From positions 1-64,000 of the IMG/VR virus record IMGVR_UViG_3300043464_001630: 64,000 nt of DNA, one strand, 5' to 3'. The first letter of the stretch is position 1; each line of letters starts with the position of its first letter. Under the pieces are notes generated by a model, which saw only the letters and a list, made by a program, of their open reading frames with translations, searched no databases and was not told the DNA's origin. Positions 1 to 3,958 of the stretch are shown piece after piece. A program made the position numbers and the translations under genes.

Positions 1-830
1 ATATCAATTACAAAGGAGTACCATCGAAAGCTGCTCTAAATTACAAGGATGCTTTCGATAAACACGATCATGATCGTTATCAACAATATATTTCAGATGT
101 AAAAGCAGGAAAAACTACTATTAATTCAGGAACACTATACCCTTATGATCTTGTTGAAAAATGTTTTGCCGGTGATGATTCTACTACTCTCGATGTACTA
201 TGGAATAACCTTCCTGACTACACAAATGGTGATTCTAGTAACGGGATAGCGATTGTAGATAGCTCTGGTAGTATGGCTGGTCGTCCTATGGCAGTTGCTA
301 TCTCTTTAGGAATTTATATTTCGGAACGTAATAATGGTTTGTTTAAAGATCATTTCATTACATTTTCCGAAAGACCAACACTACAAAAAGTAATTGGTAA
401 TAATATCAGAGAAAAGGTCAGTCATCTACAACGAGCTGATTGGGGGATGTCTACTGATCTTGAGGCAGTGTTTAATTTGATTTTGGATACTGCACAGGAA
501 AACAATATTCCAGCTTCCGAAATGCCTACTAAGTTGTATATTACAACAGATATGAATTTCGATGTAGCTTGTAATCCAAGTTTGACCTTATTCCAAACAA
601 TTGAAGAAAAGTATAAAGAAGCAGGATATCAACGTCCTGATATTATTTTCTGGAATGTAAATGCTAGGAACACACAAAGTCCTGTTCGTTTTGACGACAA
701 GGGTACTTGCTTGGTGTCTGGTTGTTCACCCTCTATTCTAAAATCCTTGTTGAATGGAAACATTCTAACTGCGGAACAGGTCATGTTAGATACAATTAAT
801 GTGAGCCGTTACGATTCAGTAACGATCTAA
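1..830 (+). CDS. DUF2828-family protein (TROVE/Ro60-like architecture with C-terminal vWA domain), 5'-truncated by window edge
   Basis: Frame 3 is open from base 3 (INYKGVPSKAALNYK...SGTLYPYDLV); MIDAS-like AIVDSSGSM, WGMSTDL, TDMNFD, IIFWNV, LVSGCSP typical of DUF2828. Confidence 0.8.
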   Translation, partial: INYKGVPSKAALNYKDAFDKHDHDRYQQYISDVKAGKTTINSGTLYPYDLVEKCFAGDDSTTLDVLWNNLPDYTNGDSSNGIAIVDSSGSMAGRPMAVAISLGIYISERNNGLFKDHFITFSERPTLQKVIGNNIREKVSHLQRADWGMSTDLEAVFNLILDTAQENNIPASEMPTKLYITTDMNFDVACNPSLTLFQTIEEKYKEAGYQRPDIIFWNVNARNTQSPVRFDDKGTCLVSGCSPSILKSLLNGNILTAEQVMLDTINVSRYDSVTI

Positions 831-851
831 AATTAATAGAAGATAATTCTT

Positions 852-1322
852 GTGATTTTAGATAGACACACTTCTTTTGGAGAAGTATTAGATTCAAAAA
901 AAGTTACTGTGTATCATTCATGTTCTTTCAACGGAGATTTTTTCAAAAGAATTTCTTCCCGACCAGACAAAAACATTCATGCTGGTTCGTTATTTCAAGC
1001 AGTCTGGAGAGCAGACTACAAAGTAAATGACGAAGAAGCGTATCCAGTTTCTTATATTTACGAATTGGTTCTGAAACCAGAACGTATTTATAATCAGCTA
1101 ATTCACGATTCGGGTGAAAATGTAGATCAAGCAGACGAAGATAGTTACAAAGAAAACTATGATCTATTAGTTTATCATAATACAGGAGAAGGTCACGCGA
1201 ATGAATCTAATCTATCTGTAATTATTCTAGATCATGGTATCATCAAATCTGTGAGATTGTATGCATCTATGAACGGCGAAGAGATCGGGAAGTTTATGGA
1301 GGAAAATAGTTTGACATTCTAG
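852..1322 (+). CDS. Hypothetical protein, ADP-ribosyltransferase-like fold
   Basis: VYH...IHAGS..QA...YDLLVYHNTGEG...SVIILD pattern, shared with ORF 3059. Confidence 0.4.
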   Translation: MILDRHTSFGEVLDSKKVTVYHSCSFNGDFFKRISSRPDKNIHAGSLFQAVWRADYKVNDEEAYPVSYIYELVLKPERIYNQLIHDSGENVDQADEDSYKENYDLLVYHNTGEGHANESNLSVIILDHGIIKSVRLYASMNGEEIGKFMEENSLTF

Positions 1323-1338
1323 TAAGATGTGGTAAAAT
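1311..1338 (+). promoter_or_regulatory. sigma70-type promoter upstream of the CAGCAA hairpin array
   Basis: TTGACA (1311) N16 TAAAAT with upstream TG. Confidence 0.55.
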
Positions 1339-1353
1339 TCTGTTAAATAAGTT

Positions 1354-1656
1354 TAGGTGCTTGCAGCAAATATTTTCCCCTTGTAATGGAAAAAAGGCAT
1401 CTAGTAAGTTTTAGATACACACAGCAAATATATAATATAATATGCAATTATACATCGTATCTAGTTGTTCTTTGTAATTTCCTCTAGAGGAATGACGTAG
1501 CGGATGTCACCGCAATATATATCTTATCAAGGAGACGGTAGAATTCCGTGTAATGAACTTAGTATTAGTAATCTAATGAAAGATTGAATTCGTCTTGGTA
1601 AGATAAATTTTAGATGCTTACAGCAAATTTTTATACACATGGAAAAAAAGCATCTA
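1354..1656 (+). ncRNA. Three related hairpin RNA units TAGRTRC-N3-CAGCAAA...GYATCTA (1354-1403, 1412-1463, 1611-1656)
   Basis: 7-bp closing stems with a compensatory change and a G-U wobble; invariant CAGCAAAT; variable loops. Confidence 0.65.
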
Positions 1657-1754
1657 GTGATAAAAAGTAGTTGAAATGGAGTGGAAGGTGTGGTATAGTG
1701 AGAGAGTAAGGTTGGTTGAGATCAATCTTAAAAAGTTCTTTAACAGATTTTAAC

Positions 1755-2053
1755 GGGAGAGAAGCTTAAGCAGGTTATAAGCGTCGGACTTCAGCCCACG
1801 TAAGTGGAACAGGGTCGGCTATTTAGAAATGAATAGTTAGTAAGGTGTATATCGGTGAACGGTTTAAAATCCCAACGCCGAGAGAAACCTCAGTAATGAG
1901 GGACTCGTAGAGACTACCATCACCTACCTAAAGTAGAAATACCAAGGTAAAGGCATAGTCCAGAGCACAAATTTACATAACTTATGTAAAGTGATGAAAA
2001 TCATAGTGTTAGGCATAATCCGAAGACAGTGGATTCGAATTCCACCTCTCCTA
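1755..2053 (+). tRNA. tRNA with CAU anticodon (Met or Ile2) split by a group I intron; exons 1755-1790 and 2014-2053
   Basis: Joined exons give acceptor GGGAGAG/CTCTCCT, D arm GCTT/AAGC, anticodon arm TCGGA-CT^CATAA-TCCGA, T arm GTGGA-TTCGAAT-TCCAC; no encoded CCA. Confidence 0.9.
1791..2013 (+). ncRNA. Group I self-splicing intron (223 nt) after U33
   Basis: P1 GACU/GGUC with U.G at 5' splice site; ATCGGTGAAC, GTAGAGACTA (R), GGCATAGTCC (S); terminal G. Confidence 0.9.
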
Positions 2054-2061
2054 CCTATGTT

Positions 2062-2096
2062 AAGAGCAGCTAGCTTTTTTAGTTAGCTGCTCTTTT
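2062..2096 (+). terminator. Intrinsic terminator after the tRNA
   Basis: AAGAGCAGCTAGC / GTTAGCTGCTCTT hairpin followed by T-rich run. Confidence 0.7.
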
Positions 2097-2124
2097 ATTT
2101 TGAGCTTTAAGACTAAATACTTAC

Positions 2125-2901
2125 ATGGAAACAAACCATGTAAGACCGACTAAATTGTGTACTAAATGTAATTGTAAAATTTCAGATAATAATATAAAAA
2201 AACATTTTGAAAAATGTAATGGAAAACCATCTTATGCTGTACGTAAATCCAACAGAATTCCTATAAATTCAAATTATAATAATGATTTATATAAGTCTAA
2301 ATTAGAAAATTTAAATTGGGAGGAAATACAAGCATTTTATGATGATAATCATTCATTTAGAGATGTACAAAAAAAGTACAATTTGCCAAATAATAGATTA
2401 ACTAAATATATTAAAGAAGGGTTTTTAAAAACTAGATCTTCTCACGAAACGATGAAGCTACGCGGGACTCGCCAAGTTCCGACAATGACTTCAGAAATGA
2501 GAGAAAAAATTAGTAAAGGAATGCGTAAAGCAGTATTAGAAGGCAGACAGAAAACACCAAGACCTTACGGTACATACGGAACTACAATTCATCATACTTC
2601 TTGGTTAGGTAATGACGAAGTATTACACGGTGGATGGGAACTTAAAGTAGCAAAATATATGGATGAGCATAAAATCTATTGGTGTAAATCAAAAGAACAT
2701 TTCACTTATATATTTGAAGAACGCGAACATGAATATTTTCCAGACTTCTATCTAAAAGATTATGACTTATTCATAGAAGTAAAAGGACAAGTAATGCCTA
2801 AAGATCTAGAAAAATGGAAACAATTTCCTCGAAAGCTTTTAATCATTGATCAAAAGACTATTAAACGATTGGACGAGTTTTTCTCTGATATCCAACACTA
2901 A
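2125..2901 (+). CDS. Free-standing putative homing endonuclease (Zn finger, NUMOD3-like, PD-(D/E)XK TnsA-like)
   Basis: CxxC..H..C, SEMREKISKGM, WELKVAKYMD...YFPDFYL...FIEVKG. Confidence 0.75.
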   Translation: METNHVRPTKLCTKCNCKISDNNIKKHFEKCNGKPSYAVRKSNRIPINSNYNNDLYKSKLENLNWEEIQAFYDDNHSFRDVQKKYNLPNNRLTKYIKEGFLKTRSSHETMKLRGTRQVPTMTSEMREKISKGMRKAVLEGRQKTPRPYGTYGTTIHHTSWLGNDEVLHGGWELKVAKYMDEHKIYWCKSKEHFTYIFEEREHEYFPDFYLKDYDLFIEVKGQVMPKDLEKWKQFPRKLLIIDQKTIKRLDEFFSDIQH

Positions 2902-2909
2902 ATACTCAT

Positions 2910-3050
2910 ATGAACAAATTTGATAAATTAGTAGAAAAAATACTAGAAGAACAAAAAAATACTGTTACCGAAGCCTGCTGGAAAAACTACAAACAGGTAG
3001 GCATGAAGAAAAAAGGTAAGAAGAAAGTACCGAATTGCGTACCTAAATAA
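2910..3050 (+). CDS. 46-aa basic peptide MNKFDKLVEKILEE...EACWKNYKQVGMKKKGKKKVPNCVPK (not in ORF track)
   Basis: Translated by hand; TAAATA at 2899; CW..YK..GMK.K..K.VPNCVP motif recalled from T4-like phage proteins. Confidence 0.7.
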   Translation: MNKFDKLVEKILEEQKNTVTEACWKNYKQVGMKKKGKKKVPNCVPK

Positions 3051-3058
3051 ATAATCGT

Positions 3059-3958
3059 ATGAATGATTCTTTATTAATCTGGGAAGCTTATCAAAATAGT
3101 ATATCTAATATAGTATATCACGTATCTAGAAAGAAATTTGACGACATCTATGATTGGAGTCATTTTACAAAAAACATACATGCTGCAAAAGATATTATCA
3201 ATACTGATAAATCAGAAGGAAAATATGTCGAAGGCAGCACGTATTATGTTTATAAATATAAAATGAATCCAGATTTAAAACTCATGAGAAGTGTGGATAT
3301 TCATTCCGAACATGTTCCTCAATGGGGTAATTCTGGTAGATCAAATGATTGGAGTAAACATATTCAAGGTATGTTTTATCTTCAGCAAACAGAAGATACA
3401 CAATTTAGAACCTATGTAACAAACGCAGTTTTAAATGAATTAAAAAGTAGATACGACAATAATCCAGAGAGAAAAAAATTATTTGAATTAATTTTAAATT
3501 TTCTTAACAAGAATCCTAAATATATTAAAATCCCAGAAAGCCAAGGAATGGACTCTCATAAGGCTTGGAAACCAGTCCATAATTATTTCATTAAAATTTT
3601 AGATCCAAATAAGACTAAATCCACACGAGAACTCATGAATTTATATAGTACTATGGCGACGATAATAGATTCTCTACAAATGATTCTCATTCGAAACATC
3701 AGTCAAAATGATTATGATAATGTTAAGTTGTGGAAAGTTTGGATTTTTGAATCAGACGATGATAATATTCACGGAAATTTTTTTTACGAAAACCAAATTA
3801 ATAAAAAGTCGTTTATTAATAATCTAATAACGTCATATTATGATGGCGTTGTATATAATAATGAAGTTGAAGGTGGAGGAGATTCTTATATTTTATTTCA
3901 TCCTAAGAGGGATCTACAATTAATAAGCAGAGAGATTTTACAAAATTCAGAAAATTAA
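3059..3958 (+). CDS. MND-leader protein with ART-like cargo
   Basis: MNDSLLIWEAY leader; VYH...HF...YDGVVYNNEVEGGGDSYILF. Confidence 0.55.
   Translation: MNDSLLIWEAYQNSISNIVYHVSRKKFDDIYDWSHFTKNIHAAKDIINTDKSEGKYVEGSTYYVYKYKMNPDLKLMRSVDIHSEHVPQWGNSGRSNDWSKHIQGMFYLQQTEDTQFRTYVTNAVLNELKSRYDNNPERKKLFELILNFLNKNPKYIKIPESQGMDSHKAWKPVHNYFIKILDPNKTKSTRELMNLYSTMATIIDSLQMILIRNISQNDYDNVKLWKVWIFESDDDNIHGNFFYENQINKKSFINNLITSYYDGVVYNNEVEGGGDSYILFHPKRDLQLISREILQNSEN

What the first reader, a model, noticed from the sequence alone, without database searches (positions are those of the whole stretch)
1..1656. DUF2828 (Ro60/TROVE-like) gene followed by an array of CAGCAA hairpin RNAs: candidate phage RNP with Y-RNA-like partners
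Seen: three units (1354-1403, 1412-1463, 1611-1656) behind a sigma70 promoter. Each has a 7-bp stem with covariation (TAGGTGC/GCATCTA, TAGATAC/GTATCTA, TAGATGC/GCATCTA), an invariant unpaired CAGCAAAT 3 nt after the 5' strand, and a variable loop. Known: TROVE/vWA Ro60 proteins bind short stem-closed Y RNAs encoded nearby and act in RNA/tRNA quality control. Inference: these are the cognate RNAs of the DUF2828 protein, placed at the head of the tRNA cluster.
Basis: partly seen in the sequence, partly recalled or inferred. Interest (0 to 1): 0.75.

Follow-up and report, generated by a model that had tools for sequence, protein, structure and literature searches.

The report
Phage Ro60-like protein's partner hairpin RNAs
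Three small hairpin RNA genes beside a phage gene for a Ro60-like ring protein belong to a conserved RNA class found next to that gene family in many unrelated phages, and they closely resemble the enigmatic "Class I" RNAs of social amoebae, so they are probably this protein family's long-missing RNA partners.

Summary
Three units lie at 1354-1403, 1412-1463 and 1611-1656. Each has a 7-bp stem, a 3-nt spacer, an unpaired CAGCAA(AU), a variable loop and an invariant G after the stem. They follow a strong sigma70-like promoter.

The adjacent DUF2828/DUF7788 protein folds as a full-length Ro60 (TROVE ring plus vWA).

A covariance model of the hairpin finds same-strand copies beside the DUF2828 gene, or inside tRNA arrays. 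This holds in about 26 of 46 uncultured phage loci and in all 10 DUF2828-positive genomes scanned whole, including Felix O1, a Listeria P100-like phage, Staphylococcus 6ec and Mycobacterium Lumos. It finds none in T4, T5, Bxz1 or Bacillus phage G, which lack the family.

The stems covary. Some relatives carry tRNA-like (YrlA-like) inserts. RNA-seq contigs of a Listeria phage show the hairpin array about 50-300 times deeper than its flanks.

The class is not in Rfam. Its nearest family, below threshold, is the Dictyostelium Class I RNA, which shares the 12-mer CUUACAGCAAAU and the same architecture.

Binding to the protein is inferred, not shown. The "tRNA cluster" here is a single intron-bearing tRNA(CAU).

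The parts
1..830 (+). C-terminal 275 codons of the DUF2828/DUF7788 (Ro60-like, TROVE-ring plus vWA) gene. The gene starts at genome position 235642 and runs across the contig junction.
   Evidence: Pfam DUF7788 5e-50 and DUF2828 1e-13. Full 477-aa ORF across a 146-nt end overlap. AF2 model of the 77%-identical L001 protein, pLDDT 89.9. Foldseek top 13 PDB hits are all Ro60/TROVE. PHROG 850 'RNA-binding protein'.
852..1322 (+). 156-aa ORF of unknown function between the Ro60-like gene and the hairpin array. It is conserved in the same position in L001.
   Evidence: ORF list. Homologous 152-aa ORF at L001 4828-5286. No Pfam or PHROG hit.
1311..1338 (+). sigma70-like promoter for the hairpin array
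   Evidence: TTGACA-16-TAAAAT, 11 of 12, with TG extension. Equivalent promoters sit directly before the first hairpin in L001, L002, L042 and L031.
1351..1406 (+). Hairpin unit 1: stem 1354-1360/1397-1403 (one G-U pair), spacer TTG, CAGCAA 1364-1369, invariant G at 1404
   Evidence: R1 score 39.9 bits, E 8e-6
1409..1466 (+). Hairpin unit 2: stem 1412-1418/1457-1463, spacer ACA, CAGCAA 1422-1427, G at 1464
   Evidence: R1 41.8 bits. An orthologous 'TAGATAC' unit is present in L001 6194-6247.
1464..1610 (+). 147-nt spacer between units 2 and 3. It is predicted to be structured, its role is unknown, and it is not conserved in L001.
   Evidence: MFE -36.2 kcal/mol, z -2.96; absent from L001
1608..1659 (+). 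Hairpin unit 3: stem 1611-1617/1650-1656 (extendable to 10 bp), spacer TTA, CAGCAA 1621-1626, G at 1657. It contains the 12-mer CTTACAGCAAAT, which is identical to the Dictyostelium Class I motif.
   Evidence: R1 50.2 bits, E 3e-8; DdR sequences
1671..1753 (+). Second sigma70-like promoter (1671-1699) and a conserved leader ahead of the tRNA-like gene
   Evidence: TTGAAA-17-TATAGT with TG. Promoter and leader are nearly identical in L001.
1755..2055 (+). tRNA(CAU)-like gene interrupted between U33 and C34 by a 223-nt insert (1791-2013) that carries group-I-like core elements. It is the only 'tRNA' next to the array.
   Evidence: In-silico spliced form folds as a cloverleaf (-24.5 kcal/mol) and is called tRNA-Met(cat) by ARAGORN at 90% thresholds. 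L001 has an uninterrupted tRNA-Met at the same place. AGACTA and AAGGCATAGTCC elements. No Rfam hit.
2062..2094 (+). Intrinsic terminator closing the RNA gene block
   Evidence: 14-bp stem followed by a T run

Best explanation
The three units are genes for small non-coding RNAs of about 50-60 nt. I conclude they are the Y-RNA-like partners of the Ro60-like DUF2828/DUF7788 protein encoded next to them.

Shown:
- They are a strand-specific, structurally constrained RNA motif: a 7-bp terminal helix with compensatory changes, an unpaired (U)WA-CAGCAA platform on the 5' side, a variable loop, and an invariant G after the helix.
- The motif travels with this protein family across phages of Firmicutes, Actinobacteria and Proteobacteria.
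- In one relative the homologous array is much deeper in RNA-seq contigs than its flanks.

Inferred:
- The array is transcribed from its own sigma70-type promoter, or within tRNA arrays in relatives, and is cut into single hairpins whose 5' and 3' ends are held together by the helix.
- The helix base, the 3' G and the CAGCAA platform are the site recognised by the TROVE-ring/vWA protein.
- The variable loop is plain here. In relatives it is a YrlA-like tRNA mimic or a whole tRNA scaffold. By analogy with Ro60/Rsr and Y RNA, it would gate the ring or tether other factors such as exoribonucleases or tRNA enzymes.
- The likely role during infection is surveillance or protection of tRNAs and other structured RNAs, or counter-defence.
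For: Protein:
- Foldseek places the AF2 model (pLDDT 89.9) on Ro60/TROVE structures over its full length. The top 13 PDB hits have TM 0.53-0.62 and include Thermus phage phiLo Ro60. In Swiss-Prot models the top hits are Ro60 of vertebrates, C. elegans and Deinococcus, then telomerase p80.
- The MIDAS motif DxSxS is invariant.
- An ESM Atlas cluster mixes DUF2828 and TROVE Pfam labels.

RNA:
- The 7 stem pairs are 97.6-99.5% paired, and all 7 show changes on both sides. Sliding the partner strand drops pairing to 31-46%.
- C-A-G-C-A-A is 94-100% conserved and the 3' G is 100% conserved in 54 instances.

Association:
- A strict motif count gives 0.54 per kb near the gene on its strand, against 0.013 per kb on the opposite strand. 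The motif occurs 48 times, against a mean of 2.0 for permuted cores.
- All 64 model hits are on the gene's strand.
- In whole-genome scans of 10 DUF2828-positive phages, hits at E<0.01 lie at the gene or in tRNA arrays, except two weaker hits (G000 212321-212372, E 0.0099; L058 6424-6481, E 0.0023) whose neighbourhood I did not check.
- There are 0 hits at E<0.2 in T4, T5, Bxz1 and phage G, 944 kb in total, which lack the family.

Y-RNA likeness:
- Relatives carry a T-arm, an acceptor-like hairpin and a D-arm in the loop. Rfam YrlA scores them at 32.1 and 27.6 bits.
- Circularly permuted versions sit in tRNA scaffolds.

Expression:
- In the Listeria-phage locus L031 the array has its own promoter and terminator. 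Its RNA-seq contig depth is about 7e5-1e6, against about 2.5e3-1.4e4 in the immediately flanking bins: upstream 2859-3009 and the first gene bin 3312-3462. Bins further into the gene reach 1.7e4 in X27 and 2.7e5 in X28.

Precedent:
- Ro60 orthologues, including phage ones, have Y RNAs encoded within a few kb on the same strand (PMC4201824, PMC12135203).
- A preprint (10.1101/2024.10.10.617714) describes Bas63 gp130 as Ro60-like, located just upstream of the phage's tRNA genes, and as a counter to the Ppl defence. It guessed that nearby 'tRNA genes' are Y RNAs. I did not align gp130 to this family.
Against: - No binding data exist. The one complex-prediction job was not folded.
- The mature ends of the RNAs are not mapped. 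The RNA-seq evidence is assembler word depth from contigs of a related phage, not reads on this genome.
- Single-sequence folding energies of units 1 and 2 are no better than shuffles.
- The recognition motif differs from the Ro60-binding helix of animal Y RNAs and from YrlA or the phiLo 'CGAA' Yrls, so the analogy rests on architecture and linkage.
- About a third of DUF2828 loci show no hit with the present model. Some have CAGCA, CUGCAA or CAGCAC variants; a few show nothing within 400 nt.
- The seed instances were chosen for having a stem, so the pairing statistics on the seed are partly circular. The non-seed hits and the strand and position statistics are not.
Confidence: 0.7

Rival explanations
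1. The hairpins are stable small RNAs tied to phage tRNA biology but not ligands of the DUF2828 protein. They could be decoys or sponges for a host factor (an RRM protein, a nuclease or a tRNA enzyme), or punctuation and processing modules of tRNA-type transcripts. Under this view the linkage to DUF2828 reflects a shared 'RNA-maintenance' gene neighbourhood.
For: In Felix O1 and in the 425-kb phage G004 the hairpins lie between tRNA genes at tRNA-like spacing. Some are built on tRNA scaffolds. The look-alike Dictyostelium Class I RNA DdR-21 binds an RRM protein, Rnp1A/CIBP, directly.
Against: tRNA-rich phages without DUF2828 (T4, T5, Bxz1, phage G) have no copies. In this genome, and in 6ec, Lumos and the Listeria phage, the copies abut the DUF2828 gene rather than tRNA genes. 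Every hit is on the gene's strand.
Confidence: 0.15
2. The hairpins are cis-regulatory elements of the DUF2828 mRNA, for example leader or trailer structures for autoregulation, stability or attenuation, rather than independent RNAs.
For: In many loci they lie in the 5' leader immediately before the start codon. In this genome the last upstream unit ends 6 nt before the ATG, with no evident Shine-Dalgarno sequence. L001 and L035 are similar.
Against: The window's three units lie 520 nt downstream, behind another ORF, with their own promoter. In the Listeria phage the array has its own promoter and a terminator before the gene, and is about 50-300 times deeper than the immediately adjacent gene bin. 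Copies occur 190 kb from the gene inside a tRNA array. The tRNA-like inserts make no sense for a leader.
Confidence: 0.08
3. The units act at the DNA level, as inverted repeats (protein operator sites, recombination sites or a miniature mobile element), and the RNA structure is incidental.
For: Each unit is a 7-10-bp inverted repeat, and several units are tandem. Homing-endonuclease-like ORFs are nearby.
Against: The asymmetric CAGCAA and the 3' G are strictly strand-specific relative to the gene: 64 of 64 hits. The arms covary while differing between copies, with G-U pairs tolerated. Circular permutation within tRNA scaffolds preserves the RNA topology, not a DNA palindrome. There is a strong local excess in RNA-seq depth.
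Confidence: 0.03

Closest known systems
Bacterial and phage Y RNAs with Ro60/Rsr: YrlA (Rfam RF02553) and YrlB; Yrl1/Yrl2 of Thermus phage phiLo
   Same: Small RNAs encoded within a few kb of a Ro60-fold protein gene and on the same strand. The 5' and 3' ends are closed by a helix, next to an internal-loop recognition motif. The distal module is variable and in some relatives is a tRNA mimic in the YrlA order (T-arm, acceptor-like hairpin, D-arm). Several copies occur per locus (PMC4201824, PMC12135203).
   Different: The protein belongs to the DUF2828/DUF7788 family and does not match Pfam TROVE. The PDB sequence profile reaches Ro60 only at E 0.31. The RNA motif (stem, UWA-CAGCAA, 3' G) is unrelated in sequence to the YrlA helices or the phiLo CGAA bulge. 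The window's units are minimal, at about 50 nt with no tRNA-like domain. Rfam YrlA gives no hit here, and only 27-32 bits against a gathering score of 69 in relatives.
Class I RNAs of dictyostelid social amoebae (Rfam RF01414; DdR-21 and others)
   Same: The same size (42-65 nt) and the same design: a short covarying stem joining the ends; a conserved unpaired motif directly 3' of the 5' strand, CCUUACAGCAA(AU) in Dictyostelium and GCUUACAGCAAAU in unit 3; a variable A-rich loop; and a conserved G just after the 3' strand...CUG(U). RF01414 is the best Rfam match for three relatives' hairpins, aligned full-length and in register (PMC7919456).
   Different: Scores are below Rfam's gathering score (22-27 bits against 41.5), and the window's own units give no hit at E<=10. 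The stem is 7 bp plus a 3-nt spacer, against 6 bp plus 4 nt. Promoters differ (sigma70-like against DUSE). Class I RNAs were reported as unique to Dictyostelia, and their known direct binder is an RRM protein. I could not establish whether dictyostelids encode a DUF2828 protein.
DUF2828 family proteins annotated 'Ro-like RNA-binding protein' (PHROG 850; Felix O1 ORF86)
   Same: The same protein family at 34-46% identity; 711 phage records carry it. The gene often lies beside tRNA genes, and an RtcB-type ligase gene lies about 1.2 kb downstream in the Listeria phage. A preprint (10.1101/2024.10.10.617714) reports that Bas63 gp130, described there as Ro60-like and located just upstream of that phage's tRNA genes, counters the Ppl defence. 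I infer that gp130 belongs to this family but did not align it.
   Different: I could find no RNA partner defined for this family. The preprint only guessed that some annotated tRNAs might be Y RNAs.

Membership tests
Y RNA / YrlA (RF02553) | Encoded within a few kb of a Ro60 orthologue, on the same strand | tested here: met
   Units lie 520-830 nt downstream and 5-140 nt upstream of the Ro60-fold gene, on the same strand. The same arrangement holds in relatives.
Y RNA / YrlA (RF02553) | A helix formed by the 5' and 3' ends next to a conserved internal-loop or bulge binding site | tested here: inconclusive
   A covarying 7-bp helix with an adjacent conserved unpaired motif is present. The RNA ends are not mapped, and the motif sequence differs from known Ro60 sites.
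Y RNA / YrlA (RF02553) | tRNA-like domain (T-arm, acceptor-like hairpin, D-arm) | tested here: not met
   The window units have plain loops of 23-29 nt. The domain is present only in some relatives: L037 3075-3181 and 3240-3300.
Y RNA / YrlA (RF02553) | Score at or above the Rfam gathering threshold (69 bits) | tested here: not met
   No hit on the units. Relatives score 32.1 and 27.6 bits.
Y RNA / YrlA (RF02553) | Physical binding to the Ro60 protein | not testable with these tools
   The complex-prediction job was not folded for a protein-RNA pair.
Dictyostelid Class I RNA (RF01414) | Length 42-65 nt, with a short stem joining the 5' and 3' ends in which structure, not sequence, is conserved | tested here: met
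   Stem-to-stem lengths are 50, 52 and 46 nt. The stem is 7 bp and all pairs covary across 54 instances. Definition from PMC7919456.
Dictyostelid Class I RNA (RF01414) | Conserved 11-nt motif (CCUUACAGCAA) adjacent to the 5' strand of the stem | tested here: met
   The corresponding positions read GCTTACAGCAA in unit 3 (10 of 11), GCTTGCAGCAA in unit 1 (9 of 11) and ACACACAGCAA in unit 2 (7 of 11). The family consensus is C-U-W-A-CAGCAA.
Dictyostelid Class I RNA (RF01414) | Conserved termini: AAG at the start, CUGU at the end | tested here: inconclusive
   The phage consensus is wAAG/uAG...CU(U/A)G(U), with an invariant G. The register differs by 1-2 nt and the true ends are unknown.
Dictyostelid Class I RNA (RF01414) | Score at or above the Rfam gathering threshold (41.5 bits) | tested here: not met
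   Window units: no hit at E<=10. Relatives: 26.8, 22.4 and 22.4 bits, which is the top family in each search.
Dictyostelid Class I RNA (RF01414) | DUSE promoter about 60 nt upstream | tested here: not met
   A bacterial sigma70-like promoter is present instead. DUSE is a Dictyostelium-specific element.
Ro60 / TROVE proteins | HEAT-repeat ring followed by a vWA domain with a MIDAS motif | tested here: met
   Full-length structural matches to Ro60. DxSxS (D288, S290, S292) is invariant.
Ro60 / TROVE proteins | Sequence match to Pfam TROVE (PF05731) | tested here: not met
   Pfam reports only DUF2828 and DUF7788. The profile against PDB reaches Ro60 only at E 0.31. 16% of one Atlas cluster carries TROVE.
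Type III toxin-antitoxin RNA arrays (ToxI-like) | Tandem near-identical direct repeats upstream of an endoribonuclease toxin gene | tested here: not met
   The units differ in stem and loop sequence, and the neighbouring protein has a Ro60 fold, not a ToxN-like fold.

The most novel reading that the evidence does not exclude
The phage CAGCAA hairpins and the dictyostelid Class I RNAs are one ancient RNA family whose conserved stem-plus-CUUACAGCAA module is the docking site for DUF2828-type Ro60 paralogues. These proteins occur in viruses and widely in eukaryotes. If this is right, Class I RNAs are not a Dictyostelia-specific invention for multicellularity. They would be the amoebal version of a Y-RNA-like RNP, possibly exchanged with viruses. 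The uncharacterised DdR-21 pull-down protein DDB_G0281243, or another amoebal protein, would then be a DUF2828 homologue.
Probability: 0.35. Interest if true: 0.92.

Novelty: new variant of a known kind. Interest (0 to 1): 0.85.

Why it matters
Ro60 and Y RNA particles are a classic but still poorly understood RNA-surveillance system. The DUF2828 branch of the fold is very common: at least 7245 non-redundant proteins in metagenomes and 711 deposited phage genomes, including Felix O1, the Listeria P100/A511 group and mycobacteriophages. A preprint reports that the Ro60-like gp130 of Bas63 counters a bacterial defence system. I infer, but did not check, that gp130 belongs to this family. No RNA partner is described for the family in Rfam or in the literature I could search.

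A defined 50-60-nt ligand with an invariant CAGCAA platform makes the biochemistry directly testable by EMSA, RIP, cryo-EM and phage genetics.

The close likeness to Dictyostelium Class I RNAs offers a concrete hypothesis for their partner and mechanism. These RNAs are abundant, developmentally important, of unknown mechanism, and thought to be unique to dictyostelids. The likeness also questions their claimed taxonomic restriction.

Tried and rejected
- Rfam at gathering thresholds on the window and on 12 loci found nothing for the hairpins. E-value scans of the window units found nothing relevant.
- A weak YrlA hit at 2060-2165 on the minus strand (E 0.51) overlaps two terminators, and I dismissed it as chance.
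- ARAGORN found no tRNA or tmRNA in the window. My first guess that 1755-2055 is a tmRNA was dropped in favour of an interrupted tRNA.
- Complex prediction for protein plus hairpin was not folded, so it is not evidence either way.
- I tried several routes to learn whether Dictyostelium encodes a DUF2828 protein. None could answer. Swiss-Prot models show only canonical Ro60. AFDB cluster organisms are masked. Atlas taxa list only viruses, bacteria and haptophytes. The 5.8-billion-protein search listed only the top 120 phage-like hits. The literature has nothing on DDB_G0281243 beyond one preprint. The partial proteomes in the paper's supplement gave nothing.
- No RNA run holds this freshwater phage, so I used a related Listeria-phage locus for expression evidence instead.
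- The own genome has no RtcB, so an rsr-rtcB-type operon is not a feature here.
- I did not build a model from typed Dictyostelium sequences, to avoid pasting many sequences.
Full report
**The observation**

The window is the first 64 kb of a 236,391-bp single-contig phage genome from lake water. Its GC content is 33.7%, and its ends overlap by 146 nt, so it is circular or circularly permuted.

- Unit 1: TAGGTGC-ttg-CAGCAAAT-...-GCATCTA, at 1354-1403.
- Unit 2: TAGATAC-aca-CAGCAAAT-...-GTATCTA, at 1412-1463.
- Unit 3: TAGATGC-tta-CAGCAAAT-...-GCATCTA, at 1611-1656.

The degenerate pattern occurs 3 times against 0.47 expected and nowhere else in the genome. A near-consensus sigma70-like promoter at 1311-1338 precedes unit 1. 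A G follows every 3' strand.

Folding energies of the single sequences are not exceptional. The structure cannot be argued from this window alone.

**The protein**

ORF 3-830 is the C-terminal part of a DUF2828 plus DUF7788 protein. The gene starts at genome position 235642 and crosses the contig junction; it encodes 477 aa.

I modelled the 77%-identical full-length homologue from a related 243-kb phage (L001) with a 35-sequence alignment. The model has pLDDT 89.9.

- Foldseek against the PDB returned only Ro60/TROVE structures in the top 13. They align over the whole length with TM 0.53-0.62 and include the recently solved Ro60 of Thermus phage phiLo.
- Against Swiss-Prot models the top hits are Ro60 of frog, human, mouse, Deinococcus and worm, then telomerase p80.
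- The MIDAS DxSxS motif is invariant.
- By sequence the link is barely visible. Pfam gives no TROVE match, and the profile reaches PDB Ro60 only at E 0.31.

'Ro60/TROVE-like' is therefore correct at the fold level. The family is already labelled 'RNA-binding protein' or 'Ro-like RNA binding protein' in PHROGs and in phage annotations.

**Comparative test**

The search for related loci gave 46 viral loci with DUF2828 homologues at 32-77% identity. A simple scan showed the same design in many of them. The design is a 7-nt strand, a 3-4-nt spacer, CAGCAA, a variable loop and the complementary strand. It is always on the gene's strand and lies within about 1 kb upstream or a few hundred nt downstream of the gene.

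In a count that does not depend on my choice of instances:
- The strict motif occurs at 0.54 per kb near the gene on its strand, 0.042 per kb elsewhere on that strand, and 0.013 per kb on the other strand.
- CAGCAA gives 48 near-gene instances, against a mean of 2.0 for the 59 other permutations of the same letters.

A covariance model (R1) built from 28 instances found 64 hits at E<=1 in the window plus the 46 loci. All 64 are on the gene's strand, and about 26 loci have a hit at E<0.01.

In the 54-instance alignment:
- The seven pairs are 97.6% paired, and every pair shows changes on both sides.
- Sliding the partner strand by 1-3 columns drops pairing to 33-46%.
- C-A-G-C-A-A is 94-100% conserved, and the G after the stem is 100% conserved.

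The seed was selected for a stem, so its statistics are partly circular. The 26 non-seed hits and the strand and position statistics are not.

Loci without a hit often have variants such as UCAGCA, CUGCAA or CAGCAC. A few have nothing within 400 nt.

**Whole-genome specificity**

- In the own genome the best hits are the three units. Next is 235566-235637, directly upstream of the gene's ATG. Beside it lies a CUGCAA variant unit behind another promoter-like site.
- In five other jumbo-phage genomes (226-465 kb), every hit at E<0.01 lies at the DUF2828 locus, except in one 425-kb phage.
- That 425-kb phage has a single DUF2828 gene. Three of its four extra copies sit between tRNA genes of a 36-tRNA array, on the tRNA strand and at tRNA-like spacing.
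- Two weaker hits were not followed up: G000 212321-212372 (E 0.0099) and L058 6424-6481 (E 0.0023).
- The family is in 711 deposited phage genomes.
- In Felix O1, Listeria phage AG20 (P100-like), Mycobacterium phage Lumos and Staphylococcus phage 6ec, whole-record searches hit only next to the gene. In Felix O1 the hits are interleaved with the tRNA genes that follow ORF86.
- Four tRNA-rich phages without the family have no hit at E<0.2 in 944 kb. They are T4, T5, Bxz1 (which has a canonical Ro60) and Bacillus phage G (reported in the literature to have a canonical Ro60 homologue and Y-like RNA).

The RNA therefore tracks DUF2828. It does not track tRNA clusters as such, and it does not track canonical Ro60.

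**Y-RNA likeness and variants**

In locus L037 six units precede the gene. Two of them carry a T-arm, an acceptor-like hairpin and a D-arm in the loop, in the order used by YrlA. Rfam's YrlA model aligns one of them full-length and the core of the other, at 32.1 and 27.6 bits, below the gathering score of 69.

In L005, L011 and L042 the module is circularly permuted. An ordinary tRNA body carries the capped stem plus CAGCAA in place of the anticodon arm, and Rfam calls one of them a tRNA with an insert.

The same RNA topology with different positions of the ends argues for function at the RNA level.

**Expression**

No RNA run holds this freshwater phage. For the Listeria-phage locus L031, the three hairpins (3014-3284) have their own TTGACA/TATCAT promoter and a terminator hairpin ahead of the gene's ribosome-binding site.

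Contigs from two RNA-seq runs of one study give a summed word depth of about 7e5-1e6 over 3010-3311. The bin just upstream (2859-3009) gives about 5e3-1.4e4, and the first gene bin (3312-3462) gives about 2.5e3-1.4e4. Bins further into the gene reach 1.7e4 in X27 and 2.7e5 in X28.

This is assembler depth, not read counts, and the ends are not mapped. Even so, a local contrast of about 50-300-fold against the immediate flanks cannot come from contaminating DNA.

**An unexpected relative**

The best Rfam family for plain hairpins of two relatives is RF01414, the Dictyostelium Class I RNA. It aligns full-length and in register at 26.8, 22.4 and 22.4 bits, below the gathering score of 41.5. It does not hit the window's own units.

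Class I RNAs are 42-65 nt. They have a short covarying stem joining the ends, an 11-nt motif next to the 5' strand, conserved termini (AAG...CUGU) and a variable loop. They are abundant, matter for development, have no known mechanism, and were reported to be unique to Dictyostelia (PMC7919456).

The curated D. discoideum sequences read GTTGAC-CTTACAGCAAAT-...-GTCAAC-TG. Window unit 3 reads TAGATG-CTTACAGCAAAT-...-GCATCTA-G, so the same 12-mer sits in the same place.

Pfam places DUF2828 in eukaryotes and viruses. That statement rests on my own knowledge of Pfam. The AlphaFold and Atlas searches do show eukaryotic members, for example 'Plant/T31B5-30 protein' and a haptophyte-rich cluster.

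A pull-down with DdR-21 recovered GuaB, NdkC, the RRM protein CIBP/Rnp1A and an uncharacterised protein, DDB_G0281243. I could not determine whether any dictyostelid protein is a DUF2828 homologue. This link stays a hypothesis.

**Mechanism and rivals**

The best-supported reading is an RNP of the Ro60 and Y RNA kind. The protein would recognise the helix base, the 3' G and the CAGCAA platform. The variable loop would act as the adaptor or gate. The role would lie in tRNA or structured-RNA surveillance, or in counter-defence.

Supporting context:
- The gene sits among tRNA genes in Felix O1 and in the Listeria phage. An RtcB-type ligase gene lies about 1.2 kb downstream of it in the Listeria phage.
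- A preprint reports that the Ro60-like gp130 of Bas63 counters the Ppl defence. I infer that gp130 belongs to this family but did not align it.

Binding, processing and function are inferred. Linkage, covariation, strand specificity and local RNA excess are shown.

The rivals all explain less of the distribution (see the rival entries):
- a partner other than DUF2828;
- cis-regulation of the DUF2828 mRNA;
- DNA-level inverted repeats.

**Novelty**

The kind of system, a Ro60-fold protein with adjacent Y-like RNAs, is known, including in phages (PMC4201824, PMC12135203). What I could not find in Rfam 15 or in the searchable literature is:
- this RNA class;
- its assignment to the DUF2828 branch;
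- its near-identity of design with Class I RNAs.

I rate it a new variant of a known kind, of high interest.

Noticed in passing
window 1755-2055: A tRNA(CAU)-like gene is split between U33 and C34 by a 223-nt insert (1791-2013). The insert carries group-I-intron-like core elements (AGACTA at 1911, AAGGCATAGTCC at 1950) and a possible P1 with a GNRA-capped hairpin. The spliced form folds as a cloverleaf, and ARAGORN calls it tRNA-Met only at lowered thresholds. Rfam's group I model does not hit. Positions 1852-1971 are 73% identical to a 735-kb uncultured phage (LR756501).
   Followed up: partly
window 2125-2901: A 258-aa ORF lies right after the intron-bearing tRNA, with weak endonuclease I / Holliday-junction-resolvase-like matches (Pfam PF05367, PHROG 15137). 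It could be a free-standing homing endonuclease associated with the intron.
   Followed up: no
window 1671-1753; L001 6455-6550: The promoter and a roughly 50-nt leader (GAGTAAGGTTGGTTGAGAT...CTTAAAAGTTCTTTAA) ahead of the tRNA(CAU) gene are almost identical between this phage and L001, although the tRNA bodies differ. This is an unexplained conserved leader.
   Followed up: no
window 1464-1610: The 147-nt spacer between units 2 and 3 folds better than shuffles (z -2.96) and contains the palindrome TTCCTCTAGAGGAA. It is absent from L001 and its function is unknown.
   Followed up: no
own genome about 235500-235637 (outside the window; locus L050): Two further hairpin units lie in the leader of the Ro60-like gene, behind a TTGACT/TATAGC promoter-like site. 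The first has CUGCAA instead of CAGCAA. The second ends 6 nt before the ATG, with no obvious Shine-Dalgarno sequence.
   Followed up: partly
L031 1777-2370 (Listeria P100/A511-like phage; an unannotated gap in NC_020871): A roughly 560-nt region with its own sigma70-like promoter and terminator shows the highest RNA-seq contig depth of the locus (up to 1.5-2 million). It appears to be an abundant unannotated phage RNA.
   Followed up: no
L058 (G004:C1:57000-73000): A 425-kb phage carries hairpin copies wedged between tRNA genes of a 36-tRNA array, 190 kb away from its only DUF2828 gene.
   Followed up: yes
L005 3243, L011 3157, L042 1762 and 1888; L037 3075-3300: Circularly permuted forms occur, in which a tRNA body carries the stem plus CAGCAA module in place of the anticodon arm. 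YrlA-like forms with the tRNA-like domain inside the loop also occur.
   Followed up: partly
window 852-1322; L001 4828-5286: A conserved 152-156-aa ORF with no family match lies directly downstream of the Ro60-like gene in both phages and overlaps its stop codon in L001. It may be an operon partner.
   Followed up: no
window 1-2200: Many freshwater and lake metagenome runs hold 6-9% of the sampled words of this stretch. This suggests that a short piece, possibly the intron core or the leader, is widespread among related phages.
   Followed up: no
L009 1343-1731: A tmRNA gene (Rfam RF00023, 68.6 bits) lies about 1.7 kb upstream of the DUF2828 gene in another phage locus. This is one more RNA-maintenance gene in the neighbourhood.
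   Followed up: no
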